Made by a program: the position numbers and the translations under genes | In this document: positions 641-64,000 of the stretch, piece after piece | Numbering within the stretch: the first letter of the stretch is position 1 | Layout of the letters: every line of letters starts with the position of its first letter | Assembly: GCF_011386835.1 (NCBI RefSeq) | Contig: NC_088792.1 | Location: 226,052,001-226,116,000 of the forward strand | Direction of reading: 5' to 3' | Source: Chrysemys picta bellii | Lineage: Eukaryota | DNA length: 64,000 nt | The notes under the pieces: model-generated | Seen by the model: the letters and a program-made list of their open reading frames with translations, nothing else | What the model was told of the DNA's origin: nothing | Database searches by the model: none

Positions 641-1057
641 CGGGGCCGGCTCTGGCTTTTTTGCCGCCCCAGGCAAAAAAGCCACCGGCGCCCCCCCCCC
701 CACGCGGCAGGGGAGGGCGCCAAAGGGGGGAGGACACCGGTGGCCAGAGCGCCGGGGGGAGGGTGGCGAGCCCTGGCCAGGGCTCCGCTCTCCCCGGCAG
801 CCAGAGCGCCGGGGGAGGGCGGCGAGCCCCGGCCAGGGCTCCGCTCTCCCCGGCAGCCAGAGCGCCGGGGGAGGGCGGCGAGCCCCGGCCAGGGCTCCGC
901 TCTCCCCGGCAGCCAGAGCGCCGGGGGGAGGGCGGCGAGCCCCAGCCGTGGCCCCGCTCTCCCCGGCGGCCGGAGCTGGAGCGCCGCACCGCGCCGCCCC
1001 CTTCCAGGTGCCGCCCCAAGCACAAGCTTGGTAGGCTGGTGCCTGGAGCCGGCCCTG
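641..1057. mobile_element. Non-autonomous hAT (Tip100/MER45-like termini) MITE with internal 56-bp GC-rich minisatellite
   Basis: TIR CGGGGCCGGCTC...GAGCCGGCCCTG. Exact 8-bp TSD GTTTCAAT at 633-640 and 1058-1065. About 4 tandem 56-bp units (units start at 781, 837, 893). Explains the overlapping GC-rich ORFs here. Confidence 0.9.
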
Positions 1058-11191: not shown

Positions 11192-11437
11192 TCCTGGCCA
11201 GGTCTGTTTTCAATGACAACTTATTGCCTTTTACAAGTCATCAGAAGAGAAATGGTTGTTAATTTGCTTTAATGGAAGAAATGATCTCTGTCAGTGTCAG
11301 TTATTTTGATATCAAAGTTGGATGCCTTTGCCATGTTTGCATTATTTATCTTAGTTGTATTTTTGTAATTGATAGGTTGGTTTTGCTCCTGTATTCTTTA
11401 CCTGTCACTTGGCTCTACACATGTGACTTAGCTGAGC
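11192..11437 (+). repeat. 246-bp direct duplication, copy 1
   Basis: Aligns over its full length with 12456-12701 with only scattered substitutions and small indels. Confidence 0.95.
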
Positions 11438-12455: not shown

Positions 12456-12701
12456 TCCTGGCCAGGTCTGTTTTCAATGACAATTTATTGCCTTTTACAA
12501 GTCATCAGAATGGAAATGGTTGTTAATTTGCTTTAATGGAAGAAATGATCTCCGTCAGTGTCTGTTATTTTGATATCAAAGTTGGATGCCTTTGCCATGT
12601 TTGCATTATTTATCTTAGTTGTATTTTTTTAATTGATAGGTTGTTTTTATTTCTGTATTCTTCACCTATCACTTGGCTCTACACATGTGCCTTAGCTGAG
12701 C
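12456..12701 (+). repeat. 246-bp direct duplication, copy 2
   Basis: Same start (TCCTGGCCAGGTCTG) and end (TTAGCTGAGC) as 11192-11437. Confidence 0.95.
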
Positions 12702-23809: not shown

Positions 23810-25290
23810 ACTAGAATTCTTTGAGTATGTCAACAGCTGATAAAGGAGAATCTGTTAAATAATGTATTTGTACTTTGAATAAACCTTTGACAAAGTTCCT
23901 CACCAGAAAGTATAAGGAAACTCTGGCAAGAAGTCATGGGGTGAGAAGTAAAGCACGGTCAAAGAACAAAAGTTAAGAGTAGGAATAAATGGTCAATTTC
24001 CAGATAGCAAAAGGTTATCAAAGGAGCACCTCCAGGATCTGCACTATGATTAGTGTTGTTTAATATATTTATTAATAATCTGGAAAAAAGGAGTGAAGTA
24101 TGAGGTGGTCTACTTTGCAGATGACAACAATTATTTAGGTTAGTCAAGACTAGAGAAGACTGTAAAGAATTTCTAAGAGATCTATCAGTGCTTGATGTAC
24201 AGGCAATGTGGTAATAGATGAAATTCACTTTGACCTATGCAAGTTACAAGACATTAGAAGGGATCATTTGAATTACTGGTACATATTAATGGGTTCTAAA
24301 TTAACTACAACCACTCAGGAAAAGAAGCTGACCATCCGTATGGACAGTTTAATGTAAACACATGTTTACAGTTTCAGATTATATTCAGGCTAAAGTTTGA
24401 TGCCAAATACATGTGAGGCTTCCCTCACATGTATTTGTACAGTTTAATGTAAACACATGTATTTGCACAGTTTAATGTAAACACACGTTCACTGTGCAGT
24501 GTTGAGTTGTTTCTGCTTTCTGGCTACTGGTGGCAGTGTTGTGGTGAATAAATGTTAGGATGTATAAATCTGGGATAGAAAATACTGAAAATATTATAGT
24601 CATTCTGTACATCGATGGAATGGTCTCACCTGGACTACTGTGTTCAGTTCTAGTCACCCCATCTCAACTATGATATAGCAGAAATAGAAGGGCTTTAGGG
24701 AAGCACAATGAAAATAATCAGGGGCAATAAAACAGCTCTATATGAGGAGAAACTGAAAAGGCTGGGACTGTTTAGTTCAGACTGGAGATGAATAAGAGGA
24801 AGTATAACAATAATGGACGCTATACAGGAGTTAATTCAGGCAGTCCTATTCACTCGCTAGAATGAGAAACCCTTTAATGAAACTCAAATACAACCAGTTA
24901 AAAATTGATAATGGATTTTGTTTTTTCCAATAGTGTAAAACTAACCTATGGAACTCTTTTGTACAAGATATCATTGCAACTAAGAGTTTAGAATAAATAC
25001 ATAAATAAAAAGCAGATATTTTTGTATGGATAATGAGAGCACGCACAGTTGTATTAGGTAGGATAAAAACATTAAGCATATCAACTTTCAATGTTTCACG
25101 TCAAAAGCCAGCCACTAATTCTAGGGCATTAGGAAAATACTTTCCTGATGGGCAGGTAATTCCACAATAGTCCACTGTGAGGTTACTCTCAAGTTCCTCG
25201 GAAGCATCTATTACTAGTGATTGTCAGAGACAAGATAGTGGACTGGATACCACTGGTCTGATCTGGTATGGCAATCCTTATGTTTTTAGT
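23810..25290 (+). mobile_element. Old 5'-truncated CR1 LINE fragment (RT C-terminus and 3' end)
   Basis: Degenerate CR1 RT motifs (cctttgacaaagttcctcac; tttgcagatgacaac = FADD; cacctggactactgtgttcagttctagtcacccc) and 3' tail ggactggataccactggtctgatctggtatggcaatccttatg. Confidence 0.8.
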
Positions 25291-28200: not shown

Positions 28201-30176
28201 TTTTTAATGTTTTTAATGAAGTAAATACTAATGGGAATTGTGTGATCATGGGAGATTAACTTCCTAGATATAGACTGGAGGATAAGTGCTAGTAATAGTA
28301 ATAGGGCTCAGATTTTCCTAGTATGCGATAGCTGATGGATTCCTTCACCAAGTAATTGCTGAACCAACAAGAGGGGATGCCATTTTAGATTTGATTTTGG
28401 TGAGTAGTGAGGACCTCATAGAAGAAATGGTTGTGGGGGACAACCTTGGTTCGAGCGATCATGAGCTAATTCAGTTTAAACTAAATGGAAGGATAAACAA
28501 AAATAGATCTGTGACTGGGTTTTTGATTTCAAAAGGGCTAATTTTAAAAAAATTAAGGAAATTAGTTAGGGAAGTGGATTGGACTGAAGAACTTGTGATC
28601 TAAAGGCAGAGGAGGCCTGGAATTACTTCAAGTCAAAGTTGCAGAAACTATCAGAAGTCTGCATCCCAAGAAAGGGGAAAAAATTCATAGGCAGGAGTTG
28701 TAGACCAAGCTGAATGAGCAAGCATCTCAGAGAGGTGATTAAGAAAAAGCAGAAAGCCTACAACGAGTGGAAGATGGGAGTGATCAGCAAGGAAAGCTAC
28801 CTTATTGAGGTCAGAACATGTAGGGATAAAGTGAGAAAAGCCAAAAGCCATGTAGAGTTGGACCTTGCAAAGGAAATTAAAACCAATAGTAAAAGGCTCT
28901 ATAGCCATATAAATAGGAAGAAAACCAAGAAAGAAGAAGTGGAATCGCTAAACACGGAGGATGGAGTGGAGGTTAAGGATAATCTAGGCATGGCCCAATA
29001 TCTAAACAAATATTTTGCCTCAGTCTTTAATGAGGGTCTTAGGGATAATGGTAGGATGACAAATGGGAATGAGGAAATGGAGGTAGATATTACCACATCC
29101 GAGGTAGAAGCCAAAGTCGAACAGCTTAATGGGACTAAATCGGGGGCCCCAGATAACCTTCATCCAAGAATATTAAAGGAACTGGCACATGAAATTGCAA
29201 GCCCATTAGCAAGAATTTTTAATGAATCTGTAAACTCAGGGGTTGTACCGTATGTCTGGAGAATTGCTAACAGTTCCTATTTTTAAGAAAGGGAAAAAAA
29301 GTGATCCGAGCAACTACAGGCCTGTTAGTTTGACATCTGTAGTATGCAAGGTCTTGGAAAAATTTTTGAAAGAGAAAGTAGTTAAGGACATTGAGGTCAA
29401 TGGTAATTGGGACAAAATCCAACATGGTTTTACAACAGGTAGATCATGCCAAACCAACCTGATCTCCTTCTTTGAGAAGACAACAGACTTTTTAGACAAA
29501 GGAAACGCAGTGGATCTAATTTACCTCGATTTCAGTAAAGCATTTTATACGATTCCACATGGGGAATTATTAGCTAAATTGGAAAAGATGGGGATCAATA
29601 TGAAAATTGAAAGGTGGATAAGGAACTGGTTAAAGGGGAGACTACAACAGGTTGTACTGAAAGGTGAACTGTCAGGCTGGAGGGAGGTTACTAGTGGAGT
29701 TCCTCAGAGATCGGTTTTGGGACCAATCTTATTTAATCTTTTTATTGCGGACCTTGGCACAAAAAAGTGGGAATGTGCTAATAAAGTTTGCGGATGACAC
29801 GAAGCTGGGAGGTATTGCCACTATAGAGAAGGACCAGGATATCATACAGGAAGATCTGGATGACCTTGTAAACTGGAAAGTAATAGGATGAAATTTAATA
29901 GTGAAAAGTGCAAGGTCATGCATTTAGGGATTAATATCAAGAATTGTGGTTATAAGCTGGGGACGCATCAGTTGGAAGTAACAGAGGAAGAGAAGGACTT
30001 CGGAGTATTGGTTGATCACAGGATGACTATTAGCTGCCAATGTGATATGGCCGTGAAAAAAGCTAATGCGGTCTTGGGATGCATCAGGCGAGGTATTTCC
30101 AGTAGAGATAAGGAGGTGTTAGTACCGTTATACAAGGCACTGGTGAGACCTCATCTGGAATACTGTGTGCAGTTCT

Positions 30177-33166
30177 CAGAGGCGTAGCGAGCGCCCTCGG
30201 TACCCTCCAACCGGAGGGGGCCCCGCAAGGAAGGGGGCCCCTAAAAGTGGCAAAAAAAATGTAAGGTATAACTAGGTAAGTGACATTTATTGACGCTATT
30301 GCACAATCCATGTCGGTTTTACTGACAAAACCGTGAAGTCATTATGATACATCATAATGCTATTGGCTACATCAGTTGTCTGTCGGTCAGTTTCGAATTT
30401 TAGTTGGACCCATTCAAAGAATGTGTATTTGCGTTCATAATGGCGGTCGGCGGATAAATGTTATTAATTTAGTTGTTTAATTTTTTATCGTTTGAAACGA
30501 TTAGTTTCCAACGCAGAAGCATGCTTTGTGATGTCTAAGAGAACGTATAAGAGCGGAGCTGGTAAACGAAAGGCAGCAAAAGATGCCAAGAAGGAACTTG
30601 AGAAAATTCCAAAGTTGTCAACGTATTTTGCGCTGCAATCCAATGTACAGGTACAGGCACATGAAACGGACAGCGCTAGCAGCGACGAATCGTATCCAGA
30701 AGTATCCAGAAGTGCTTCAAGTGAGGTCGAAGGTGAATCCAGTTGTTCTACCAAACAAACTGTGACAGATATTCCAGCTGCTGCCGGGAAAGAAGTATCT
30801 GAATCTGAACCACTGACTGATGATCCAGGAGATTGGCCGTCTATAATATCGGACAGGCAAGTGTGTGACATTGTTGCACGTGGCCCACCGCAGCAGAATG
30901 AAAGTTACGAATTTCCATTTAACGAGGAAAGACGGAGGTTCACAAGTACTCATTTCTATCGAACCATGGCAAATGGCGAGAAAATAAGACGTTCATGGTT
31001 AATGTACTCAGTTCAGAAAGATGCCATTTTTTGTTTTTGTTGTAAATTATTTGGCACTGGCGACATACCGCTACGTCGTGGAACATCTGCTTGGAAAGCA
31101 CTGTCAAAAAGACTTCAGCAGCATGAAACAGGCAAAGGTCATCAAGCCTGTATGGTGAAATGGTTTGACCTTCGGTCAGGCATAGTAAACCGTACATCTA
31201 TTGACCAACTCGAATTGCAGGCTTTTCTGAAAGAAAGATTTCTGGAGAAATGTTGTCAAATGCATGGTTGATGTCGTTATTATCTTGTCCAAAAGAAACT
31301 TGCATTTCGAGGAAGTAATGAAAAGCTCGGCGATCCTTCGAATGGCAACTTTTTGGGACTCTTTGAATTGCTTGCAAAGTATGATACTGTCCTCAGCGAA
31401 CTTTTACAGAGGATTAAGAAGGCAGAGACACATGTTCAGTACCTCAGTCCACAGATCCAAAATGAGCTGATTCAACTTGTTGCCAGTAACATTCAAGAGG
31501 CCAACATAGCGCAGCTTAAAAAAGCAAAATATTATTCAGTTATTTTGGACTGTACTCCTGACGTGTCACATGAAGAACAGATGTCTGTGGTGTTACGTTT
31601 TGTTGAATGCAACGGTGAAGATGGTGTCAATATTCGTGAAGCATTTGTTGGTTTTCTTAATGTTCATGATACAACTGGCGAGGGCTTATTGGAAGCATTT
31701 CTTGAAAAGGCAAACAATTTAGGAATACACATTGCTGACATGAGAGGCCAAGCTTATGATAACGGCGCAAATATGAGAGGAAAGAATAAAGGAGTTCAAG
31801 CCCGCATGCTAGAAATAAATGACCGTGCCTTGTATGTACCATGTGGAGCTCACTCTTGGAATCTTGTGATCTCAGACGCGGCAAAGTCATCGAAATATGC
31901 CGTTGACTTTTTCGGTCTGATTAACAGAATATACGTTATCTTTTCTTCTTCACCTTCACGTTGGGATATACTTCAAGAACATATGCCAATATCTGTTAAA
32001 GGCTTATCGGACACTCGTTGGGATTCGAGAATTGATGCTGTGAAGCCATTGTGTTATCACCTTGAAGAATTGTGCAATGCTTTGTTATCTTTGCGAGAAT
32101 ATGCGCTCGAAAAGAAAGATGGCAATACAGCAACAGAAGCCGATGCGCTTTTAGACCATGTTACTACCTGGCCTTTTGTTCTGACTGTGTACACGTGGTA
32201 CGATATACTATTTCACGTCAATAAAACCACCAAATTAATTCAGTCACCAGATGTGTCAATTGACGTACTGCAGGCAGAAGTCAGTGCTACAAAGAAGTTT
32301 TTGGAAGACTATCGAAATACAGGATATATCTCTGTGGCCACAAATGCACGTGAAATAGCAGAGCATATGGGTATTGAGCAGGTGTTTCCAGAAACCAGGG
32401 TGCGACGTAAGAAGAGAATGTTTGATTACGAATGTGCTGATGATTCGAGTCGTCTTTCTGCCGAAGAAAAATTCAAATCGCAGTTCTTTCTTGTTCTCAC
32501 TGATCAGGCCATATCTTCTGTTTCGTCGTGATTTGACCAACTCGTGGAGTGGTATAAGTTGTTTGGATTTCTGTATAACGCTAACAGCCTGAAGCAGTGT
32601 CACAGAGAAAATGAACTGGAGAATCACAGCAAAAATTTTGAAAGAAAAATGGGAGACATTGATGCCAACGAACTCATAATGGAATTGATGCGTTTTATTT
32701 ATGTCATCGAGAAAGAGAGAGGACTTGTCACGGCAAACAATTTTTTAACGTACATATACAAGGCCTTTAGGAGATATATCCGAATCTTTCCATTTGCATC
32801 AGAATTCTTCTGACCACACCAGTTACTGTCGCTGGTGCTGAAAGGAGCTTCAGCAGAATGAAACTGATCAAGAATATCCTGCGCTTAACCATGACAGGCT
32901 TTCTGCACTTGCAGTTATCTCAATCGAAAACAAGATTGCCAGATCTCTGGACTATGACACATTGATTAACCAATTTACGGAGAACAAGGCTCGAAAGAAG
33001 CGCTTTGCGTAAATACGGAATACATGTACACTGTAGGCCTATGTATACATAATATGAACCCTGTATATTGTATAAAATAAATACCGCATTCCAGTTTCTG
33101 CATTGTAAGGGGCCCCACCCGGAAATATGTTCGGAGGGGGCCACGTTCTTTGTTGCTAGGGCCCTG
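30177..33166 (+). mobile_element. Full-length hAT DNA transposon (Tip100/ZMYM-like transposase type), 2990 bp
   Basis: Exact 8-bp TSD GCAGTTCT at 30169-30176 and 33167-33174; removing the insert restores the CR1 ORF2 sequence. Imperfect TIRs CAGAGGCGTAGCGA / CAGGGCCCTAGCAA (10/14). Contains a transposase gene. Confidence 0.96.
30531..33012 (+). pseudogene. hAT transposase pseudogene (~830 codons reconstructed)
   Basis: ATG 30531. TTF-type Zn finger (WLMYS...FCFCCKLF...LQQHE...H). Catalytic-domain motifs YYSVILDCTPD, QAYDNGANM, CGAHSWNL, LSDTRW. C-terminal dimerisation domain TPVTVAGAERSFSRMKLIK...RLSALAVISIE. TAA at 33010-33012, AATAAA at 33076-33081. Lesions: compensating frameshifts near 31238 and 31302, TGA at 32529-32531 (likely from CGA), frameshifts near 32765 and 32896. 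Confidence 0.93.
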
Positions 33167-35674: not shown

Positions 35675-37965
35675 TTTTAAACTATCATCAAGATGATTGG
35701 CTCTCTTTGATCCCTCATGCTGAGTTTATCTAAAATAATGCCACCAACACCTCCATAAAGCAGACCCTCCTTTGCTAATTATGGTCTCCATCCTCACGTT
35801 CATCCACAGATCGCCTTGAAATTGTCCATGCCCATTGTCACTGAACTCACTGCCCACATCTAGTAGGTATACTAAGAACTCCAGAAGTAGTTAGAAGTCG
35901 CCAAGGCAACTTACAAATGGTATGTGAAGTGGTCCCACCAGCCAACACCAGGCTTTGAGGTAGGGGATAAGGTTTGCTTGTCCACCCGGAACCTGCGATC
36001 GACTTGCCTCTCTGCAAAGCTGGACCATCAGTAACTAGGACCCTTCCAGATCACTAAACAGATTAACCTTGTTACATTTAGGATACAGCTACCAGATTTC
36101 CTCCAATTCAGCCCACCTTCCACATCTTTCTTCAAAAACCCTTAGTCAAGAATCCCTTCCTATTTCATTCTACTCCCTATTCCCCCGCCTATAACTATCC
36201 ACGTCCAAGAAGAATATGTTGTTCGGAATTTTCTAGACTTTTGCCGGGTCCGAGGAAAACTACAATATCTAATTCAATGATTCCTACTCCAATCACTAGG
36301 TTAGACTGCCTATGTCCCAGGCGCCTGACAGTGCATTTGGTATCTTTGATAGAAATGTCAGATTTCTTGAATGAGAAATACGGGTATTGATTCCCATTCC
36401 TATTTCAGGACACCATATTTTACACTGCTTTTTTAATTTTGTGGGGAGGAGGCAAAAAGGGTCACATAATTTTTTATCATATTGTATGTTATGTCAGGAA
36501 AGCGAAAGGTACAGTATAACACAGCTCTATTTATGGACTTCAGGATGCCTATTTTCTACAGTGTATGTTATGCCCCAGCTAGAAATGGCACTGCACAACG
36601 TATGTAATATGTCGTAGCCAGCAGCTTTTGTTTTAAGTGGCAGTTCTTTCATGCTGTTGAAATACATGCAACATACTACAAGAAGTGGTAGTCCCACTTT
36701 TTTCTTTCCTTCTGGGTAATGTTCAACATGATGTAATGGAAGCTACTGAAGTCACCTTTTATTTAATATATTTTGTTATATGTAATTTTTGAATAATGCA
36801 CCATGAAACAATGTTTAGATTTATGTGATGATGATGATCATGGCATGGTGCCAATAACCAGATATGCTATTTAAAACCATTCAACTCCTGCATTGCACCT
36901 TCTATTAAGTATAATTGTAATATCCATGGAATAATCACGGTGAGATTTTCAAACCTGGATTCATAAATTGTGCCCACAAGCTTTGTGCATACAAGGCATT
37001 TGTATGAATAAATTGGGTATTTCAGAAACCTGGAAGGGCATAAGAAAAGAGCAGAAAACATTGAGCATGAAATGCAGTGATGGGCCTGCACCTTGCCTAG
37101 CCATTTATAATAAGTGGGTGTAAAATACATCATTCTAACTTGGTAGGATTTTACACTCACTTTACAATGGTGCAAATGATTACACAAGGTGTAATGGAAA
37201 ATCAGGCCCAATTACATCTAAATCTTGCGATTTCAAGATACACACCTCCTTACTCCTCTCCCCAAAATAGTCAATTCTGGGCTATTTTTTAGAAAATAAA
37301 ACTTTATTTACTTAGAGCCAGATCCTCTGTAAAATTATTTAGCTCCAGTGAAGTTGCACTGCTTTACATCACTGGAGGATTGAGACCTGAAAGTCCGTAT
37401 CATGAGGTTTCCAGTATGTAGTCAGGCCATACTCCCACTGAAATTCAATGGGAATTTGTTAGAGCAGGGTCTGAGTACGAAAATGAATAAAACTTTAATA
37501 TGAACATCAGGAACTGGCCCCTTATTTCCAGTATCTTACTTTATAAACTGTGTCTTTAAATCAACATTTTTGAAATCTTAACATTTCACCTGTTCATTAG
37601 GTTATTTTCTACCTCACAGGCTGATTTCACTGAGTAACATTAATATGTTTTGTAAAAGAAACTCCCTTTCCTGTGGGAGATATGGAATTTTAATGTTCAG
37701 GAGCCAATCTTCAGGGGCACTTGGTTAACTTTACTCACATGAGTTGTCCTGGTACAGCTCATGAGACTAGTCATCTGAGTAAAGTTGCTCACGTGCTCAA
37801 GTAGCTGCAGGACTGGGAGCTAGGACTTCAGTACTGGAATGTTGCAAAATTAAAGCTAAACCATGAATCAAAAAAACCTACATTAACTACTGGAAGACCA
37901 GTTTTACGGATTCAGATGGAAATCTATTCCCCAAACAGATTGAAAGTTCGTGATTTAGAACTTAC

Positions 37966-38352
37966 TTGCTGCATTGTAGGTGAATGTAAAGCAGACTGGA
38001 CCTGCATTGGGAGTTGGTTTCCAATGGACTGCTGCATTGTAATTGGCTGGTGTTGCTGTATGTTGAGATGCTGGTGGAGAGGTGGGCTAATCTGAAGCGG
38101 TGGAGGTGGGGACACAGCCATATTTGCTATGGAAACAGTCACTGGCATTTGGTTGTTGGGCTTGGGTGCGATATTCCTGGGGATATTAGCGTGCATGGCA
38201 GTTATGTGCGGATTCATTCCGGGTTGTTGGTGATAATGGGAGCTTAGGTACAGTGCGGAATGAGCCTGTGTGGGCCCATGAAACACTGACTGTTTTGAAT
38301 TAATCATCTGAGGCGGTTGGGACGCCTTAACATCAACAGGTTCACTGTAGCT
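37966..38352 (-). CDS. TOX: TOX coding exon (exon 7), Pro/Gln/His-rich region
   Basis: Within ORF 37924-38379: SYSEPVDVKASQPPQMINSK...HSPTMQQ matches recalled TOX sequence. Acceptor ctcaacag|AGC, donor CAA|gtaagt, 387 nt, phase 0/0. Confidence 0.96.
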
Positions 38353-38957
38353 CTGTTGAGAAAACAAACAAACAAACAATCTTTAGAGACTGATAACAGC
38401 TGTTTTTCTGAGATCTATTTACTGCACAAATGAACCTCCGCATCATTCCATGCCTGACCAGAATACCTTAGTGTTCTGCAATAATAGTCTGAAGCACAGT
38501 GCAGTGGTAATTTCCCGTAGCATACTGGAGAATTTTGTTCTATAACAAATACCCACATTTCCCCTTTTGTTCTTTGCTCGTTAGATGAAGAACTCCTTTA
38601 TGACAGCACTCATCTCGGCAGCATACATCAGTCATGGAGATGCTACTTAAAATGTCCTTACAGCGGAGACTGGTTATTACTCTTAAATAAATAGAAATAA
38701 AGTTAACTCTCACACACCACACAGATTTTTCTTCACTCCTGTAAATACAGCCCCTCTGCTTCCTGGCTTGACATTTTGATATTGCAAAACTTGGAAGTGA
38801 TGTTACTGACATGATAAGCTACTCGACAAATGAAAATGTGGCTCCAAACCTGCAACCCTTACTCACATAAGCAGTCATTACTTCTGTTATTAGTCCCCTT
38901 TAATTCAATGGGACCACTCATGCGAAGAAAGATTATTTGTGAGGTAATAAGGCAATA

Positions 38958-43566: not shown

Positions 43567-44515
43567 TGTCCTGATAAAGTATGTGTGGCAAGACTGTATG
43601 TGAAGTTATAAGATTCCCCTGTATGGTGTTATTAACACATGTTCCAAACCCCACAGCCCTGCCCAAACAGAGGTTGACAAACAGGTCTGTCCTAAACAAA
43701 GATGTGTGCTCTGCTTAATTTTTGTTTAAGCAGTAAACAGAATCATCAAGCAGGAAGGGAAGACAAAGGAAGTTTAAACAGGTAAAAAAAAACAGCAGGG
43801 AACATCCTTCCACATACACTCTTTGTCTCCTGATATCTAGCTGGAAATGTTTTTCAAGAAGGGGGCTGAAACTATAAAAAGGAGGAACAAACTCCCCAAG
43901 TCACCCCCCCTCCCTGTCCATCACATTCACTGTACCCGAAGATACAAAGGAAGCAATGGTTGGACTTGGGGGAGGGGTCCTGATCTGAGAGTTTGGTCAG
44001 TAATGCTGCTGGGGCATGTGGTGAGAAACTTTGCTTGAATCTAATATAGCTTAAGTTAGGCATTAGTGAGTGTTTTATCATTATTGTTCTTGTAACAATT
44101 TCTGACTTTTATGCCTTATTACTTGTACTCACTTAAAATCTATCTCTTTGTAGTTAGTAAACTGGCTTTTTGTTTTATCTAATCCAGGGTGTTCAAGTTG
44201 AAGTGTTGGGTGACTCCATTTGGGGCAACAAGTTCCTTAAAGGAATAACAGACTCAGTATATCTGTACTGTCCAGGAGAGGGCTGGGGGAAAATCTGAGA
44301 CTGGGAGTGTATTGGGGTCACCCTGTGGTAAACTTTAAGGCTGGTAAGAGCCAAGGTGTGGCTGGCTGGCTAAGCACACAAACAGACATAGCTGGGAGTG
44401 ACTAACACACTGGAGGCTGTTTGTGAGCAGCAAGCCATTGTAAAGGGTACCCCAGGTTACAGGGCAGGGGGGACACAGTTACACATGAGCCTGGATTGTA
44501 TCCTGGTATGTCACA
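43567..44515 (+). mobile_element. Probable solo LTR
   Basis: TGT...TGTCACA termini and LTR-like U3/R/U5 composition resembling the LTR at 59973-61315. TSD not clean (CTAT vs CTTA). Confidence 0.6.
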
Positions 44516-45635
44516 CTTAGAACAAAAGCCCAGAGGAACAAAGAGAAAGAGAAGAAAATGGGCCATGTAGAAAGAAAGGAAAAGCAGGGGAGTGAGAAAT
44601 GAAAAGAAGCAAATAAAATAAAGAATACCTTTAAGTATAAGCAACCAAATACCAGGAGTATGAGAGCATAGCCCACTTTTGCCATTCTTATTTTACTGTA
44701 TATATTGGTGCTTGGTTGCTACACAGGTTGGGGCACTTTATAAATTAGAGAGATAATTTAGATAATAGAACTCCAGTCCCTTTATCTTTCCCCACCAATC
44801 TTGCTGCTCTCCTCTCCTGCTCTTGAGCAAAGTGAGGATTCCCTTTCACATTCAAAGCTCCCCTGTTCAATGCCACAACTCCTCATGCCTGCCTCCTAAA
44901 GCCAACCATCAGCACGCCTTGTCTTCTCACACCGAACTACTCTGAGAATCATGATGGTTCCTACCTGCCCCAGACCTGACCTCACAGTGTAGTACGCTCA
45001 CCTCCTCCCTGCTGGTCCTTATTCAGAGAGTCACACCATGAACGTGTGGTGGCTGGAGACAGGCAATGTCAACCAAGCAGGCAGGCAAAGGAGGGGATCA
45101 CATCAGAGGAAAGGTCGTACTGGAATTTGTTCCACCCTAGAGTCCTCACCGAGCTCCAGCTCCCCATGGCCAGAAACTCAGCTAAGAACAGACATTCTGA
45201 TCAATACAATGGTCCCACAGATACTAGCCGTCACTCAGGTGACATCCACCAGGCAATTTGATAGCTTCGTTAGGGTTAGGATTTTCTTCTTCAGTTTGAA
45301 TTAGTATAGACTATGGCTCCTCGGATCTGTAACTGGTTTTTTTAAACTATCACTTGTAGATCTTAGTAGGCAACCAGCAACTCAAATCTGTAAGTGAGAG
45401 TTTTTATTCTCATTCTGAGTTGTTTCTGCTTTCTGGCCACTGGTGGCTTTTCTGAGTGACTGAAAATAAAGCAAGGGTAAGTTTTTCATATGGCAGCATT
45501 CATATGTGCTTCCTTAGAAGTGTAAGTAGAAAATTTAAAATTAGTTACACTTTTTTTAATTTTGCCCTTTCAAGCCTTGTTTCTGCAGATAGTATGTTGG
45601 AAAAGCTGCCATACACAATCGCATGTGCACGCACG

Positions 45636-45638
<3 letters not shown>

Positions 45639-45669
<31 letters not shown>
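45639..45669. repeat. (AC)n microsatellite
   Basis: Directly visible. Confidence 0.98.
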
Positions 45670-45670
<1 letters not shown>

Positions 45671-46404
45671 CCAGTTGCTGAAAAAAGCTTTGGAATATAT
45701 TTGCTGTTATTTTCAACATTTTAAACTATCCAATTATATATATTTGAATTAAATTAATAAATACTTTTACAGTAATGTTATTGTTATTACTCAAAAAATA
45801 TTACAAAAACTCAACTTTTCCTAAGAGATACCACACAGTTACCACCATCGTTCTACATGCAGAGAAACACTGGTAACTCAGAGATCTCTGTGTGATGTCT
45901 GGCAAAATGGACAATGACCTGTTAAGAAAACTGTCCATGATGAAGACACATTTGCAGAGCCACATTTCTGTTCACAATCAGGGAAAAAGGAAGTTCGTAT
46001 TAAACTAAAATTATACGCTGCATTGTTGATTATATTTATTCAAGTAACAGACACAAAATACCCAAAATTGTGGCCAATATACTCACCAAGAATCAATTTA
46101 TTTTTAATTTTAGAACAGTTCTCTTTCAGAATCAGCAGCATTATCAGCAACAGATTCGGTGTTTTGTGGTATGAGGAAAATGTCTAAAGGATCCCAAACC
46201 TTCTGAATGGAGTACTGTAAATTGAGTGGTATCTAGACTAGCTAGGGCCAATATCATCAGAAATATTTCTTTATTAATGTGAGCAATTAGACTTCACTAC
46301 ATAATCAACTTTGACTAAACTTGAGGAATTGCTGAATGTTCATACATAAATGTTTCTGGTACCTTTGGCCATCACCAGTATCTATAAAATAAGTGACAGG
46401 GTCA

Positions 46405-46556
46405 GGGTCTGATTCTCATTAGCACTAATGCTACTTTATACCACTCTAGCAGTGTAAAGGGTTTATAAATGGGTGTAAATATAATATACTCCTACTTTCC
46501 CTTTACTCTGCCAGAATGGTGCAACACAGCCTTAGTGTAAAATGAGAATCAGGACC
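46405..46556. mobile_element. Small PIF/Harbinger (Chompy-like) MITE; one example of many similar decayed palindromic elements in the window
   Basis: TIR GGGTCTGATTCTCATT / AATGAGAATCAGGACC (14/16), TSD TCA on both sides. Similar remnants at about 37062-37209, 37317-37390, 47275-47360 and 63696-63783. Confidence 0.7.
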
Positions 46557-47480
46557 TCAGAGTTTGGGTTCTGTTTGGATTAGCACTGTAAAATCCGGAA
46601 GAGCAAAACTTTTATGTGAACATTTCAGAACGTCAAAAAAGTTATAGGTTGATGCAGGTTTTGGATGAAGGTTGTTAACACATGAGGTTTCTTATTTTAT
46701 TCATTCCAAATCACATATATTATACAAATGAATTGCACCACATGTGGCAGGCTCAAAAGTCTTTAGACACATCATTGATACTTGAGTACAAGATGGGTCA
46801 GCTACTGAATGTCATATACTGTTAGCCAATGTCGTTCTGAAGGAGAACATTTTAAATTCTGAAGATACATTTTATTATCATTTATGGGGGATTGTCATGG
46901 ATCCATTAAGGCCATTTATGAATCTAACCTGAATAAATATGCTGAAGAACATGTGACTTTAATTTGATACCAGTGTCTTTGTTCCCCAATTGAGAGGCAT
47001 AGGGAGGCTTTAAAAATGCAGTTCTAATAACCTTATACCAACTATTCAATCCCAATCACTTTAGAAACAAACAAGAGCCTTCTCAAAATCAAAAATCTCT
47101 CAAACTAATGTGATCTCAAAATCTCCACCAGTTTGGGCTTCAATCTTGTGAGAACATCTCTAGGTCTTGGCACTGCTGAAAGGGAAGCCTCACATGTATT
47201 TGGCGTCAAACTTTAGCCTGAATGTAATCTGAATGTTACCATCTCCGTCCATCTCTCGCTATTTAAAGTCTGTGAGAGATTGTTAGCTGGTGTAAATCAG
47301 CACAGCTCCCTTGGCTTCAAGGCAGCTATGCCAATGTACACCAGCTGAGAATCTGTTTCTATTTTGTTACTGGATGTTTTAGTAAATGTAGAACTTTCCA
47401 ATGCCAACGCTGGGTGGGAAATGAGGAGAATAGGATTCTTACTAGCTGCATATTAAAAACTCTAGTGAAATGGAAACTAA

Positions 47481-47750
47481 GGCTAGGTCTACACTATGTG
47501 GGGGGAGAGGGAGGATCGACCTAAGATACACAACTTCAGCTACGTGAATAGCGTAGCTGGAGTTGCGTATTATAGGTCGACTTACCTGGCTGGGAGGGCG
47601 GTGGCGAGTCGACCGCTGCTGTGCTACCGTCGACTCCGCTTCCGCCTCTTGCCGCGGTGGATTTCCGGAGTCGACGGCAGAGCGATCAGGGATCGATTTT
47701 ATCGCGTCTTCACTAGTGGGTGAAGACGTGCGGGTAGTGAAGACGTGCCC
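47481..47750. mobile_element. Young PIF/Harbinger MITE
   Basis: TIR GGCTAGGTCTACACTA / TAGTGAAGACGTGCCC (12/16), TAA TSD on both sides, strongly CpG-rich interior. Confidence 0.88.
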
Positions 47751-50171
47751 TAACTTAGATTCTTGTTTTACTGTTTGATGTAATTATTTCAAGTTAATTC
47801 AAGTTAAGTTGAAACATATTGTGTAAGGGTAAATTGCAACATTAAATGATAGACTTCCAGCAGAAGCATCAAAAGGAATGTGCATAAGGAAGGCAAACTG
47901 CCACCTGGAGCTCCTTGGCAGAGCAATTATTGCACTGCCCTTAAGAAGGTGCAACATTTGGTCTCCTTAGTGATTGACTGACTCAGTTCTGCCATGGCCC
48001 TGACACCTCATTACCACCTCCCTCCCATTCACCCTCACATAGGTGCCAGGCACCATCTACCCTTTAATGCTTGGCCTTTATTTCATGTATGTTTTGGATG
48101 ACGTTGTTAACTTTATGGACTGCCACCACAATGAGACCTCTGAACTAGAAAAGGATGGTGGACTCAGTGTATTAAAGGTTAGGCCAAACTGTAATACGAG
48201 TGAGTTCTCACAGTGATGGTATGCCTAACAGTTTTAATAATTGCTTAGAAATTTCCTTAGGTCTTTAGGATTTGTGGCTCTATAGGTTAAGAGGTTGAAT
48301 GGGATTATTCTTTGGCTATATGCATTTACTGGATTTTTTTGCTTCAAACAATGTTTTTAGGATTAGAAATTTCTTCTCTGACAGTTTGTGGATCTTTGAA
48401 GGGACATGACAACTGGTTTGTGAAAAATACATACATAAACAAGTCTGAAAATACCCAGTCAGTCAACAGGTAATTCGGATCTACGATATAGAGTTACATG
48501 CATAGTTTAAATGGTAATATACGGTTTTTGATATATGGTTCTTCAAACATTTTTGATATCACAATAATCACAAATGCAAAGATAGTGTGTCATAGAAACC
48601 TGAAATATCTACTGTTTATAGCCTTACATTACAATTTTCCTAGGTAGGGAAATTGATATTTGGGTACAAATAAAAGCTGCACATTAATGTGACTGCTTAT
48701 TATATTTTTCTGCTAAGGCAACAGTGCTAGTGATCCTGTAGGAGTTTAGCAGCTTAAAAAAAAAAGCTGTTAATACTTCAGACAGAGCTGCATTTCTCCT
48801 TATACGGAGAAAGCCACTATTGCTGTTTTGTAACGGTTTCCCTGAAAATAGCCTACACTAATCTTTAAAACTTCCAAAATGTCTGCACAGACTAAGTACT
48901 TTTCCAAGACAGTGGCTGGGAGTTCTGTTAGGGGAAGTCTGAGCCTACCATACAATCAAAGGGGCAACACTGTCACACGTTCATTAACTTCAAAAAATTT
49001 GCATTATTTCTAACACTCAAAGAGTGTCAAATGTGGTTGATAATGATGCTATGTGAGAGCACAAATTTGACCTAGCTATGCCATCATAGCTTTGAAAAAT
49101 TACCTTTTTTCCTACTTGAGGGTAGATGCAAGCCATAGTTGTTAAGTATGTCTTCAGAAAATATTTATATATGTATATATAAATAAATATTTCACATATA
49201 AAGCAAAAATCCTACTGCCAGCCAGCATACACAAAAACGCCAGGGTAAGCAATAAAAAGTGCTTGTTTTTTAAAAAGTCAAATTGCAATCACAGCATTTT
49301 AAGTAATGCTATACAAATTGCTATATACTGTAGGTTGCATTTCTGAGCCTAAACAGTACTAAAAGTTGCAACTAAGGGCAAATATAAAGACACTTGTTTA
49401 GAATGCAAAGGCTTAGTCAGTATTATAAACAATATGGCAATCTGCATAGCATTACATATAATGCTTTGTAATGTCATTTTGACTTCACATATTGATTTCC
49501 ACATAAATGAACAGGCTTGACTATAGCCCTATTAATTTCAATTTTTATAAAAAGAAAAGAAAAATGTTGAGAAAACATCTATCAAATACACTGATAGAGT
49601 TAATGGAGATTAATGCAAAGCTATGACATTAAATCCATACAATCAGATGTTCACCTTATTGGGTGTTAACCCTATTTAAAAACATATTACAGGTAAGGCT
49701 GATGGCACAGCCTATTGTTAAAGTTGCCTGACATGTCCAATTATAAGACCTTGCTTTCAGTTGCTTATTACTTGGCTAAACTTAAATCTTGTGGGTTGAC
49801 ATTTTACATGCCAGGTGTATACCTCAGCTGATTTTTTGGGGGCAAATTTTAGCCAGCATAGTTCAGCTGTTTTCAGGCTGCTACACGTGACTTGCCTGAG
49901 CAGTCATCATCCACACAGAACAGCTAAGCATGCTCCCTCCAGAGGTGAAGACAGACTTCTGGCATTTCCTAACTTTTGCATGCTTGCCTTTGCAACTGTA
50001 ATAACATTATTTTTAATGTAGTTTTTGTATGTGTAATAATAGAATAGATTTTAAACACAGAAAGTTTATATTCTGTTTCAAACAGATGCAATTTACATGG
50101 TGAATCTTAATATATCACCTATCCAGTTTGTAATTACATGCTTATTTAAAGTCCCAGTTTTATTTTTTTTT

Positions 50172-50358: not shown

Positions 50359-52025
50359 ATCACATCTAAATGCTTAAAGTTAAGCAGATACTTAAGTTCC
50401 ACTAAAGCCAATGGGACCTAAGCACATAATTAAGTGCTTTCTTGACTAGGAATGGGCTTAAACATGTGTTCAAATGCTTTCCTACATTGACTTAGAGCCT
50501 CAGACACCAATATTTCTTTAATTGAATTTTCTCTTGAACCTTCCTCAAAGAATGCCATGCAGCTATTTTTTGTCCTTAAAAAAATCAGAGTAAAATTCTC
50601 AGTTTTACATATATTTACCTTATCAAAATAAAACAGTTTAGTGTTTCATATAAACAACGTATGATGGGCAAAGTAACGATACCTAATTCATTATTACAAG
50701 TGAAAAGCTGACTTTGTAATTCACATTAAAATGAGTGTGTTGGTCTTATTTTACCACTCAGTAAAATCTTACAAATAAATTAACACTCATGTACAGTGGA
50801 ACCCTGGGACAGTTCCACTGGTTTGAAAGAGTCTATTCTAAACATAGAGACTATCTCTGGAAGTTTACACTCATCAAGTGTAGAACAGGAATGACAGGCA
50901 TTTTGTACATGTTTTTAATAAATATCCTGGCATATATGATGCTAGATTTCAAGTATATAAGACAACACAGGAAAGCTATGAATAAGGTTACACTCATGTC
51001 TCAGAGTTTATCTACGTGAGGTTTGATCTCACAGGAGTCATATACTGAAAAACCTGAAGAAGTGGTACGATCACGTGGAAAACTGCATGAAAGACCCGGT
51101 GTTAATTATCTGTTAAATCTTTGTTTTGAAATGTCCCTAACAAGATGGTAAATATGTCGTGAAACTAACAAAAAGTGCTGCTCAGCCACACCTGTATAAA
51201 CTTCAAGCATTGCCATCCTCCCTCCTAACCTTTACTCACAACCACCGGACAGTCAAGTGCATCTAAACTTGACCTCATCAACACTTTGGATTCTGTGAAA
51301 TAGACACCAAAATGATCATCAACAATATGATTCTGCAAATTGCCCCATTAATGTTTCAAGTCTGCATGTTGCAGTAATCTTACCTTTGTCTGTGGGTTTT
51401 AAAACAGTGGTTTATATTATATCACTTGTGAAATCCTGGGCACTATGAATATCTCTATAAATCAAGGTCAAAAGTTTCTCTTAACTGTGTACAGTGGGTC
51501 CTGTGACATGCTGTTCCAAAGCGAGTGATTCACACTATGTCCTATACTGTGTTCGTCTACTTCATCTGAGGCATGCACAAAGAAAGTTCAGCTTATCATG
51601 GGAACGTTTGCATTGTGATACTGAGCATGATCATTGCTGTACAGTGCCTGCATTAAAAATGAGGCATTTTATGTGTGATACCACAGTTTCCCCCTATATT
51701 CAGAAAAGAGTATGACTGGTAATTGTGCAGTGCTGTGTGGCCCCTGCTGGCAAATGTGATCCTTTTACTGATGACCACTGGGTCTCTCATTTGCTTCATT
51801 GTGATTATAATCCCAGCCTGTAGATGTTCTATGAGTAGGAATAGATGGGCTGCAGTATGCCTATGTTGAGAGAGAACCGTTTGTATTGAGCACTAGAGCA
51901 GAGCATGGCTAAGATAGGTATAAGGTGGTAATGAGCAACAATATTTACACTAGATACCATGGCGCTGAGTATCATACAAATGCTGAAAATGGTTTACAAT
52001 CTATCACAATATATATATGTGTTAC

Positions 52026-52106
52026 CTTGGATACAAGGCTTGCTCTGTATGCAGCTAACTGCTTCAAATATTCCTTCTTAGCAGCTTCAGTTTTCTTTTT
52101 GTATAC
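52026..52106 (-). CDS. TOX: TOX coding exon (exon 6 by human numbering), C-terminal part of the HMG box
   Basis: Minus strand reads ag|GTA TAC AAA AAG ... GTA TCC AAG|gtaac = [27 protein letters not shown], the end of the TOX HMG box. 81 nt, phase 0/0. Not captured correctly by the ORF track. Confidence 0.96.
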
Positions 52107-61315: not shown

Positions 61316-64000
61316 GATGCATTCCATACATCATACATACAAAGAAATAAGTGCTATCTGTGAAAGTCGTAATTCTAGGAGCAATGTCACCATCTCAGAG
61401 TGCTTTGAGTGATGGATGAAGTGATGTTACCCGTGGAAGTACCTTTTCCAGAGATCGAGCTTACAGTTTCTGGAAAAATACTACTGTGCTGCTATCAGAG
61501 TTGAATCCAACCTCCAAATCTCCATCCTCAGCACAGCTGAATGGGTTCCTTCATGCTCAGAGAAAGCTGAAAGTTTGCCAAAGCAGGAGGCCAGTGTTCA
61601 ATTTTAATCCTTTTATTTTGCAGTAGAAGCAGCATCCAGAACTCTATGAATTCCACTAAAATGTAGCTGTCATATAAACAATCCACAGAACTGGTTAATG
61701 GATAGTGAAATATGCCACCATTTGACTTTTAATCTAGGTACAAACTGTAACTGAGAGAGGCCCAGGGCTAGCTCTACAGTTCAACAGTCTCTTAGATGAC
61801 ATAGTATGAAAATAACACTGATGATCTATTAGAAGCTTGGAGAAAAGAATTCAGTCTTTCTGGCATGCAAAGTTAAGGTCACAGGCCAAATACAGCTCTA
61901 GTATTAACCAGGTTCAACTCAATTGATTTTGCTGGAGCTGGAGCCACTTACGCCAGGGCTGAATTTGATCTCATGAGGTTGGAATTTATAAGGTGAGGTT
62001 TGGTTTTTTTTAGATCAAATGCACATTTTGGATAACACCCGCACCCACAAACATTAAATGTGTGATTTACGTGGTAATTACTTGTACTCAGCTGTACTCT
62101 GCAAAACTGGATCTAAACCCAAATGGACTACAATTAGTGTAATTAAATCTGGCTGAGTACACAAATGATTTAGTGCCTGACTCCCATGGACTTTTAGTCT
62201 AGAGAATGGAGGGTGGGGGAAGGATGAGGAGGAAATCGTGATTATTATTTATATTGCAGTAGCACTTAGAAGCCTAGGTTCCATTGGGCTGGGCATACTA
62301 CAAACACATAAGAAACAATCCTGGCTCCATAGGTACATGTAGGATTTATTTAGTAGTTGTGTCTGTTGTTTGCACCACTTGGACATTTGAAATTCACCCC
62401 TGGTTTGGAGGGCTACCCTCTCTACCACTTTAGCACTCCAGTGACGCTGCAGAAAAGAAAAGGCTGTCAAGGCAGGCTGGAAGAGAGGCCAGTAGATCCA
62501 TGAATATACTGACTAAGTGGCCTTATCACCCTGTATAGAGGGTGTGCAGCAGTTACTATTCTGATGTACGTTGCTTGGGGGTGAAGTCAATCTTCCCAAT
62601 CCCAGGCTGGAAATCCTGTTTACCCTGGCAGCTTTGTGTGAGAGGGCTGGGTTTGATCTGCAAGAAATGTTGTGGAAAAAATGAACTGCAAAGTTGAGGT
62701 CTGATACTGCCCCCTTCTGAAGTTAGTAACAAAATTATGCACCTCAATGGGAGCAAGATCTGGCCCTTGCAGAAACTATTAGACTGCTTAATCATGTGTA
62801 GCATTTTGATACCTTAACAACATACATATATATATATTTTATTGACCTACTTGTGTTCCAGTTCATTAAGCCCAGCTGTTCTCAGAGGAGGAGAAAAAAA
62901 GCAGACAGCAATGGGAAGAGGGATCCAACCAACTAAAACAAACTGGAATAGTTGTTTTAAATGCCTCATGCGTTTATCTAGCACTTTCAAGGGAAAAAGC
63001 AGTTTTATTACAGAAATTTGCCAGTAAAACATGAGTTTCACTAACAGAAAAGGGGTAAAACGAATGACAAAAGCCTTTTTGCTGTTATAAATAGGGAGGA
63101 AGGAGGAAGCAGTTTAAGCTCTACTGATAGCAAATGGAGGAAAACACTCCCTCTTTCTTATCAGCCATTCAACATCTCAACATTGAGGTAGCTTTTATTG
63201 TGGAGGTTTCTGAATATATTTTGTTTTCTAATTCACAATGGCAGAATATACAAACAGATTTGTCTCTACTTCCTATTCTCGTTTATACAATAAAGTAAAT
63301 AAAAAGATTAAATTCCTCAATAATTGTATGCTACCCATAAATCTGAGGATATATTTCAATAATTTTGTGGTCTTCTTCAAAGTGTTTTATATTTATACTT
63401 TGGAGATGGCTTTATAAATGCATTGCGAGTTTTAAAAGTAAAGGTTGCTAAAAGGGAATTTTAGTGTGTGACATGAAAGCAGAGGAGAAAAAAACAACTC
63501 AACTCAATACTCTCTTTCTCACTGCATATGGTAGAGGCTTTACTTCATAAGCAACTAAATAACGAATAAACTGTGAATAAATGTTTTGAAAATGTAACTG
63601 TGTATTCTCACTTGAAAATCTGCACTCAATTTATACTATTTCAACAACTATATAAGGCCCTGCCAGAAAAATACCATGTATGCTCTAAAATGCTAGAGGC
63701 AGATCCTTAGCTGGTGCAAATTGTCATAGCTTCATTGAAGTCAGTAGAGCTATGGCAATTTACCTTACCTGAGGATCTTCCCTGCAATTTTAAAGACACA
63801 AAGGGGGTTAGGTGTCCAATTCCAATTGAAAGTAAATGGGAGCTGGGTTCCTAACTCCCCTTTGTGCCCCCACCCGCAGATTGCATATATTACATATATA
63901 TGATCAGATTATGTCTTGCCCTGAACCAAGCATACAAGGGGCAGAAAGAATGTAAAATGTGCAGGGGGTGAGCATATGTGCTCAGGGAGAGGTGGTGTTC

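What the first reader, a model, noticed from the sequence alone, without database searches (positions are those of the whole stretch)
24344..24485. Fossil complex repair junction: 53 bp captured in inverted orientation from 23 kb away, wrapped in snap-back and tandem copies
Seen: an old CR1 is interrupted by (i) a snap-back GTAAACA-CA-TGTTTAC; (ii) 24373-24425, the reverse complement of 47181-47233 at 51/53 identity (both differences C>T, one at a CpG); (iii) a second snap-back CCTCACATGTATTTG, inverse of 24404-24418; (iv) a 28-bp unit twice (24426-24481). The local target ACAGTTTAATGTAAACAC appears three times. The donor lies in TOX intron 6 and is not recognisably repetitive; the recipient is in intron 7. 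Established: iterative microhomology-primed templated insertions are the signature of polymerase-theta end joining and of MMBIR/FoSTeS. Inference: a germline break here copied from a distant part of the same gene, recording either physical proximity (intragenic loop) or use of TOX pre-mRNA as template.
Basis: partly seen in the sequence, partly recalled or inferred. Interest (0 to 1): 0.8.

Follow-up and report, generated by a model that had tools for sequence, protein, structure and literature searches.

The report
Fossil multi-template DNA repair scar
A dead LINE element in a turtle TOX intron carries an old, fixed repair scar in which a polymerase copied two short pieces (53 and 32 bases) from 21-23 kb away in the same gene; it is a clean example of a known mutation type and has no evident function.

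Summary
24373-24425 is the reverse complement of 47181-47233 (51/53). The 15-nt fold-back, the 28-bp tandem pair and the three target copies are all present.

It is not a dispersed repeat. In independent short-read assemblies of four other organism labels, exactly two contigs cover the 53-mer, while the neighbouring LINE parts reach hundreds to thousands. It is not a misassembly. One independent contig spans 24030-24800 with no differences, and related species carry the same junctions.

New here:
- A second fragment 78 bp downstream (24503-24534) equals 45416-45447 in direct orientation (31/32). The scan had also noted it (s1-329958). These are the only dispersed short high-identity pairs in the 64 kb. 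Recipients are 78 bp apart and donors 1.8 kb apart, which points to one multi-switch event.
- Two species have a single 28-bp unit, so the tandem changes by slippage.
- T at 24382 is a later substitution.
- The first "snap-back" is mostly native LINE sequence.
- The two fragments have opposite polarity relative to TOX (minus strand), which argues against pre-mRNA as the template.

Best reading: a germline replicative or end-joining repair event with about five template switches at 0-3 nt of microhomology. It is a known kind, is neutral, and predates the split of five organism labels. The pathway (MMBIR/FoSTeS versus polymerase theta) is not resolved.

The parts
24238..24354 (+). Left flank: LINE (CR1-like) ORF2 remnant
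   Evidence: tblastn with the window's own LINE ORF2 piece 29888-30187: residues 8-46 align here. RT matches lie further upstream at 23787-24082.
24341..24372 (+). Target copy 1 (duplicate of the native target, 28/32 to 24464-24495).
   Evidence: the repeat finder family D1; junction table.
24373..24425 (+). Captured fragment 1: inverted copy of 47181-47233, 51/53
   Evidence: Exactly two contigs cover it in each of four other assemblies. 24382 is C in organisms B, C, D and in the donor.
24423..24437 (+). Fold-back arm: reverse complement of 24404-24418 within fragment 1. Shares 3 nt (CCT) with the end of the donor copy.
   Evidence: the repeat finder I1, 15 nt, 100%, 4-nt loop.
24426..24481 (+). 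28-bp unit in tandem twice (27/28). Each unit is the fold-back tail plus a restart of the target. Single copy in organisms B and C.
   Evidence: table 4: 28 nt left out at 24439 in X6 and X7. X9 contigs keep the unit-to-unit joint.
24464..24502 (+). Native target (copy 3) running into the first copy of the 7-nt GCAGTGT
   Evidence: Collinear with the LINE ORF2 reference once the inserts are set aside.
24503..24534 (+). Captured fragment 2: direct copy of 45416-45447, 31/32
   Evidence: (0 expected by chance). Depth arithmetic gives exactly one further contig over 24503-24534 in each run.
24533..24546 (+). Second copy of the 14-nt target repeat (12/14 to 24496-24509), where native LINE sequence resumes
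   Evidence: the repeat finder D2.
24552..24650 (+). Right flank: LINE ORF2 remnant
   Evidence: tblastn residues 62-96 of the reference ORF2 piece.
47181..47233 (-). Donor 1, single-copy intronic DNA. A gapped 7/9 homeology extends to 47242.
   Evidence: No LINE ORF2 similarity in 44000-48500. Held by runs of eight studies.
45416..45447 (+). Donor 2, single-copy intronic DNA, 1.8 kb from donor 1
51975..52106 (-). Context: end of the TOX HMG-box exon, which fixes the gene on the minus strand
   Evidence: phmmer against PDB: 2co9_A, thymus HMG box protein TOX, residues 66-92, E 1.1e-9.

Best explanation
This is a single ancient germline repair or replication accident inside a dead CR1-like LINE in a TOX intron. 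A growing 3' end left its template and restarted several times at very short matches.

Read on the + strand, the steps are:
1. Native LINE sequence is copied up to 24372.
2. The end jumps 22.8 kb and copies 53 nt of the opposite strand (47233 down to 47181).
3. It folds back on its own product for 12-15 nt, with a 3-nt CCT overlap.
4. It returns to the native target 29 nt upstream of where it left, which duplicates that stretch.
5. It copies native sequence to 24502.
6. It jumps to 45416-45447 and copies 32 nt in direct orientation, with a 2-nt TG overlap.
7. It returns 7 nt upstream in the native target, with a 2-nt GC overlap.

A 28-bp unit bounded by CACA(T/C)GT was also doubled, either in the event or soon after. 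It later contracted in one lineage.

Shown here: the copies, their uniqueness in the genome, their presence in five organism labels, the junction overlaps and the interruption of the LINE frame. Inferred: one event, a duplex-DNA template, and the replicative (MMBIR/FoSTeS-like) pathway. The scar is most likely neutral.
For: - Both fragments are near-identical to single places elsewhere in the window, with 0 chance matches.
- An ungapped self-comparison of the whole window finds no other dispersed short pair at 93% or more. The two recipients lie 78 bp apart and the two donors 1.8 kb apart.
- Logan contigs of four other organism labels show the same junctions. X15 has one 1860-nt contig with 0 differences over 24030-24800. 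X6 and X7 have one contig across 24000-24568 that differs only by a 28-nt gap and 4-5 letters.
- Depth over each fragment equals the locus contig plus exactly one other contig. LINE parts of the same stretch reach 10^2-10^4.
- The host LINE frame is interrupted. Reference ORF2 residues 46 and 62 are 45 nt apart, but 197 nt apart here. The excess of 152 nt compares with 123 + 37 = 160 nt of inferred inserts.
- The donor region has no LINE similarity, so the LINE site is the recipient.
- Junction overlaps are 0-3 nt exact, plus 70-78% homeologies of 7-9 nt. These match the microhomology and microhomeology reported for replicative template switching (PMC2621351, PMC6902434).
- Human germline MMB-TI events copy from up to five templates (PMC8421209).
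- The target shows net duplication rather than deletion, and the two donors have opposite orientations. Both fit serial switching on duplex DNA.
Against: - No species with the empty site was seen, so 'one event' and the recipient direction of fragment 2 rest on parsimony.
- Junction 1 has no exact microhomology, and junction 3 has one unexplained letter.
- Copy 1 differs from the native target at 3 of its last 11 nt, more than the roughly 2-3% seen in the captured fragments. This needs error-prone synthesis or a mosaic with the donor homeology.
- An alternative alignment makes the last 15 nt of fragment 2 look weakly LINE-like, 13/22.
- Known small MMB-TIs were searched only within 100 bp (PMC8421209). 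Polymerase-theta inserts are mostly under 25 bp and come from within about 10 bp, with about 3% from distant sites (PMC5068794). Neither described class exactly covers 32-53 nt from 21-23 kb.
- The pathway cannot be read from sequence.
Confidence: 0.72

Rival explanations
1. Two or more separate events. A fragile, hairpin-prone spot in the LINE broke repeatedly over time, and each time it borrowed sequence from the same 2-kb region 21-23 kb away because the two places are habitually close in germline chromatin.
For: - The 28-bp tandem varies between species, so the site does mutate repeatedly.
- The site folds strongly as single-stranded DNA.
- The two fragments are separated by 77 nt of native sequence and have separate target repeats.
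Against: - All five organism labels carry both fragments.
- The two fragments have similar divergence from their donors, 1-2/53 and 1/32.
- Two independent hits 78 bp apart using donors 1.8 kb apart are much less likely than one multi-switch event.
Confidence: 0.12
2. An RNA- or cDNA-templated patch. Pieces of TOX intron RNA were reverse-transcribed, by LINE reverse transcriptase or polymerase theta, and used to mend a double-strand break. This is the class 2 templated sequence insertion type.
For: - Both donors lie in one transcribed intron.
- Class 2 TSIPs are short patches from distant transcribed DNA with microhomology at the junctions (PMC5110952).
Against: - On the recipient + strand, fragment 1 has the sense polarity of TOX and fragment 2 the antisense polarity. 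A single-stranded sense RNA cannot template both from one end.
- Class 2 events lack target duplications (PMC5110952), while this site has 29-nt and 7-nt duplications.
- There is no poly(A) and no TTTT/A target, so it is not class 1 either.
Confidence: 0.08
3. End joining that captured two free DNA fragments released from the 45-47 kb region, followed by local slippage.
For: Insertion of stray genomic fragments at breaks is known (PMC5110952, PMC7969033 abstract).
Against: - Ligation of fragments explains neither the 29-nt and 7-nt target duplications nor the fold-back sharing 3 nt with the end of fragment 1.
- It also leaves the native stretch between the two fragments unexplained.
Confidence: 0.05
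4. Not an event at all: the fragments are pieces of a dispersed repeat, or the structure is an assembly artefact.
For: - The host is repetitive LINE DNA.
- A palindromic MITE-like element lies 30 bp from donor 1.
Against: - Only two contigs cover each fragment in four genomes at 85% likeness or more, against hundreds to thousands for true repeat parts.
- An independent contig has 0 differences across all junctions.
- Run word shares are 0.91-1.00 in other samples and studies.
Confidence: 0.02

Closest known systems
MMBIR/FoSTeS templated insertions (MMB-TI; Hastings 2009 PMC2621351; Osia 2021 PMC8421209; microhomeology, Bahrambeigi 2019 PMC6902434)
   Same: - Serial template switches at 2-3 nt of microhomology or 70-80% homeology.
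- Both direct and inverted copies.
- Several templates in one event.
- Return to the original locus with local duplication.
- Present as germline variants without a large rearrangement.
   Different: The described small germline MMB-TIs were searched only with templates within 100 bp. Here two templates lie 21-23 kb away, and there is no accompanying copy-number change of kilobase scale.
Polymerase-theta end-joining scars (van Schendel 2016 PMC5068794; Kent 2016 PMC4912351)
   Same: - Reiterated priming and snap-back synthesis in cis, with copying in trans.
- Error-prone copying, about 1 error per 30 nt, which could explain the 1/53 and 1/32 differences without any age.
   Different: - Those inserts are mostly under 25 bp, about 85% come from within 10 bp of the break, and they accompany a deletion.
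- Only about 3% come from distant sites.
- Here the inserts are 32-53 nt from 21-23 kb, with net target duplication.
Templated sequence insertion polymorphisms (Onozawa and Aplan 2016, PMC5110952)
   Same: A short stretch templated from a distant, transcribed region and inserted in the germline.
   Different: - It is not class 1: no poly(A) and no TTTT/A site.
- It is not class 2: it has target duplications, fragments of opposite polarity and a same-gene donor.
- It is fixed across species rather than polymorphic.
Short-range template switch mutations (Loytynoja and Goldman 2017 PMC5453318; Walker 2021 PMC7954356)
   Same: The 12-15 nt fold-back that creates a perfect hairpin is exactly this kind of local inverted copy.
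   Different: That model covers switches within tens of bases and does not cover the two distant donors.

Membership tests
MMBIR/FoSTeS-type templated insertion | Inserted letters are copies of sequence present elsewhere in the genome | tested here: met
   51/53 and 31/32 matches, 0 expected by chance. All letters of 24341-24546 are assignable to a donor, a fold-back or the native target, except 24438 and 24466.
MMBIR/FoSTeS-type templated insertion | Microhomology or microhomeology at the switch points | tested here: inconclusive
   There is 3 nt at J2, 2 nt at J4 and 2 nt at J5. J1 has none exact but a gapped 7/9 homeology. J3 has 1-2 nt plus one unexplained letter. Overlaps this short are also expected fairly often by chance.
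MMBIR/FoSTeS-type templated insertion | Several switches, templates in both orientations, return to the starting locus | tested here: met
   One inverted donor, one direct donor, one fold-back and two returns with 29-nt and 7-nt duplications.
MMBIR/FoSTeS-type templated insertion | Dependence on a broken or stalled replication fork and its polymerases | not testable with these tools
   A historical event; there is no experimental handle.
Polymerase-theta (TMEJ) templated insertion | Short insert templated from the immediate flanks of the break | tested here: not met
   Only the 12-15 nt fold-back fits. The 53-nt and 32-nt fragments come from 22.8 and 20.9 kb away. The typical values are in PMC5068794.
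Polymerase-theta (TMEJ) templated insertion | Accompanied by loss of sequence at the junction (delins) | tested here: not met
   The target is duplicated rather than deleted. The LINE frame shows an excess of 152 nt.
Class 1 TSIP (LINE ORF2-mediated) | Target-site duplication plus poly(A) tail plus TTTT/A insertion site | tested here: not met
   Duplications are present, but there is no A-run at either end of either fragment and no TTTT/A target.
Class 2 TSIP (RNA-derived DSB patch) | No target duplication; patch derived from an RNA | tested here: not met
   There are 29-nt and 7-nt target duplications. The two fragments have opposite polarity relative to the TOX transcript.
Dispersed repeat / transposable element fragment | Many copies in the genome | tested here: not met
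   Exactly two contigs per fragment in X15, X6, X7 and X9 at 85% likeness or more. There is no Rfam family in the window.

The most novel reading that the evidence does not exclude
Two donors 1.8 kb apart were used by a break 21-23 kb away. This scar may therefore record a specific, stable germline chromatin contact (a loop) inside TOX. If so, such paired 'captured fragment' fossils, mined genome-wide and across species, could serve as a record of ancestral germline three-dimensional genome contacts.
Probability: 0.15. Interest if true: 0.55.

Novelty: new member of a known kind. Interest (0 to 1): 0.3.

Why it matters
The scar is a well-preserved natural example of a multi-template repair event. 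Every letter can be assigned to a source, it is fixed in the germline, and it is shared by several related species.

It shows that small templated insertions can draw on templates tens of kilobases away. That range is excluded by design in the main human survey of such events (templates within 100 bp, PMC8421209).

For annotation it is a neutral scar in intronic junk DNA, with no sign of function. Its wider value would come only from a genome-wide census of such pairs, recording donor distance, orientation and relation to chromatin contacts.

Tried and rejected
- **A third captured fragment.** 24431-24475 matches 45764-45721 at only 73% over 45 nt, is AT-rich and has E 0.02. I treated it as chance.
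- **Direct DNA alignment of the recipient to the window's LINE copy.** It gave an uninformative, gap-ridden alignment. Protein-level tblastn was used instead.
- **An alternative reading in which the last 15 nt of fragment 2 are native LINE sequence.** The match is 13/22 to the reference. I rejected it because the first 20 nt of the fragment would then have no source, and it fits the length excess worse (predicted 123 against 152 observed, compared with 160).
- **Other LINE copies in the window covering this ORF2 part.** None were usable.
- **Rfam on the whole window.** No hits.
- **ESM Atlas look-up of the 37924-38379 (-) ORF.** It returned only a 0.77 'amelogenin' lead, which is uninformative. 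Pfam found nothing for it, so its TOX identity stays unverified.
- **Earlier notes of the scan.** A search by words for similar scars found nothing.
- **Dating from donor-recipient divergence.** I judged it unreliable, because repair polymerases make about 1 error per 30 nt (PMC5068794).

Full report
**1. The observation**

- 24373-24425 equals the reverse complement of 47181-47233 at 51 of 53 positions. Identity stops abruptly on both sides in an ungapped comparison.
- Allowing 3 mismatches, the 53-mer has these two places only in the window. None occurred in 100 dinucleotide-preserving shuffles.
- The repeat finder returns:
  - three copies of a 32-nt target at 24341, 24436 and 24464;
  - a perfect 15-nt inverted repeat, 24404-24418 / 24423-24437, with a 4-nt loop;
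  - a 14-nt direct repeat, 24496-24509 / 24533-24546.
- The 28-bp unit is present twice at 27/28.
- As single-stranded DNA, 24341-24500 folds at -29.6 kcal/mol, z = -4.6 against shuffles.

**2. Repeat family or misassembly?**

Runs of eight studies hold the recipient stretch. I laid Logan contigs of four of them on 24000-24800 at 85% likeness. They were chosen for different organism labels (B, C, D, E) and none comes from the source sample.

- In X15, one 1860-nt contig covers 24030-24800 with no difference.
- In X6 and X7, one contig covers 24000-24568 with 4-5 substitutions and a single 28-nt gap at 24439.
- In X9, three overlapping contigs cover it, and one of them contains the joint between the two 28-bp units.
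- Depth over the 53-mer is the locus contig plus exactly one other contig in every run. For example, in X15 6.87 + 8.62 = 15.5, and in X6 40.7 + 42.4 = 83.1.
- LINE parts of the same stretch reach several hundred to 29,000, so the method does detect dispersed repeats.

The 53-mer is therefore two-copy in all these genomes and the junctions are real.

**3. A second fragment**

- The self-comparison also showed 24503-24534 = 45416-45447 in direct orientation at 31/32. Again there were only two places and none by chance.
- A first-stage note on this window had flagged the same thing (s1-329958).
- From the bin depths, the extra depth over 24486-24539 equals one further contig covering just 24503-24534 in each run. 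The fitted contig depths are 7.4 (X15), 40.5 (X6), 3.5 (X7) and 36.8 (X9).
- An ungapped self-BLAST of the whole window lists 8 pairs of 26 nt or more at 93% identity or more. Six are tandem or local repeats. The other two are these fragments.
- The recipients lie 78 bp apart and the donors 1.8 kb apart.

**4. Which site is the recipient?**

- The window holds a better-preserved LINE at 27.6-30.2 kb with endonuclease and reverse-transcriptase domains.
- Residues 8-46 of its ORF2 piece 29888-30187 align to 24238-24354, and residues 62-96 align to 24552-24650.
- The 15 intervening residues predict 45 nt, but 197 nt are present.
- The excess of 152 nt matches the 123-nt first complex (the spacing of target copies 1 and 3) plus the 37-nt second complex, within 8 nt.
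- The donor region 44.0-48.5 kb has no LINE similarity.
- Each fragment has only two copies and is foreign to the LINE, so it must be native at the 45-47 kb sites.
- This is firm for fragment 1. For fragment 2 it is somewhat weaker, because a 13/22 alternative alignment exists.

**5. Anatomy and junctions**

On the + strand the order is:
1. native LINE to 24372;
2. fragment 1;
3. the fold-back tail, 24426-24437;
4. one letter;
5. native target restarted 29 nt upstream (this restart, together with the fold-back tail, forms the 28-bp unit that is doubled);
6. native sequence to 24502;
7. fragment 2;
8. native sequence restarted 7 nt upstream.

Exact overlaps at the junctions:

| Junction | From → to | Exact overlap |
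|---|---|---|
| J1 | native → fragment 1 | none |
| J2 | fragment 1 → fold-back | CCT |
| J3 | fold-back → native | G or TG, then one unexplained letter |
| J4 | native → fragment 2 | TG |
| J5 | fragment 2 → native | GC |

Homeologies lie next to J1 (7/9 with a 2-nt gap), J4 (5/7) and J5.

Copy 1 differs from the native copy 3 only in its last 11 nt, at 3 positions. Two of those three letters equal the donor homeology.
- as native sequence, since copy 3 holds the same imperfect palindrome, altered by error-prone synthesis; or
- as a mosaic at the switch.

**6. History**

All five organism labels carry both fragments, so the event predates their common ancestor.

| Position | Organisms A/E | Organisms B, C, D | Reading |
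|---|---|---|---|
| 24382 | T | C (both contigs, and the window's donor) | T is a later change in the A/E lineage |
| 24477 | G | A | A is most likely derived, because copies 1 and 2 have G there |
| 28-bp unit | double | single in B and C, double in D | see below |

- The most parsimonious reading is ((B,C),D),(A,E), with two units in the ancestor and a slippage loss in B/C. The opposite reading (later gains) is not excluded.
- Divergence of the inserts from their donors (1-2/53 and 1/32) cannot date the event, because repair synthesis is itself error-prone (PMC5068794).

**7. Template and pathway**

- 51975-52106 on the minus strand matches the solved TOX HMG box, so TOX is transcribed from the minus strand.
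- On the recipient + strand, fragment 1 equals the sense transcript and fragment 2 its complement. One 3' end copying sense pre-mRNA cannot yield both, while duplex DNA can.
- Three features fit replicative template switching (PMC2621351, PMC6902434, PMC8421209) better than typical polymerase-theta scars (PMC5068794):
  - net duplication of the target;
  - five switches;
  - donors at 21-23 kb.
- Polymerase theta does perform snap-back and in-trans copying (PMC4912351), and about 3% of its inserts are distant.
- Class 1 and class 2 TSIP criteria (PMC5110952) are not met.

**8. Verdict**

This is a real and tidy fossil of a known mutational process. The loop idea is untested, and the pre-mRNA idea is disfavoured by the opposite polarity of the two fragments.

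Noticed in passing
window 11192-11437 and 12456-12701: A 246-bp direct duplication at 94.7% identity, 1264 bp apart, is the largest non-tandem repeat pair in the window.
   Followed up: no
window 737-976 and 19399-19636: Two GC-rich minisatellites with a period of about 56-57 bp and 91-98% identity between units. Their long ORFs translate to similar Pro/Gly/Arg-rich repeats, so they may belong to one repeat family.
   Followed up: no
window 47262-47361 and 63694-63794: Palindromic MITE-like elements about 70% alike, matching each other in both orientations. One ends about 30 bp from donor 1 but does not include it.
   Followed up: partly
The LINE tail resumes at 33245.
   Followed up: partly
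window 45413-45420 and 45450-45457: At donor 2 the copied stretch is bracketed by an 8-nt direct repeat (TTCTGAGT) spaced 37 nt apart. That is the same spacing as the 14-nt target repeat around fragment 2 in the recipient (24496/24533). Donor 1 is likewise bracketed by TTCAG. This may be coincidence or a clue to how the switch points were chosen.
   Followed up: partly
runs X25-X29 (organisms F, G): Organisms F and G hold 0.70-0.75 of the donor stretch's words but were not listed among holders of the recipient stretch. This could be a listing limit or a real difference at the recipient locus, in which case they are possible outgroups for dating.
   Followed up: no
window 24401 (table 3): The donor contig should read C where the recipient has T, but no row for 24401 appears, although the X15 donor contig is reported with two other letters. 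The listing rule or the donor state in those genomes is unexplained.
   Followed up: no
window 37924-38379 (-): A 151-aa Gln/Pro-rich ORF on the TOX strand looks like a coding exon between the donors and the recipient. Pfam and the Atlas gave nothing, so its identity is unverified.
   Followed up: partly
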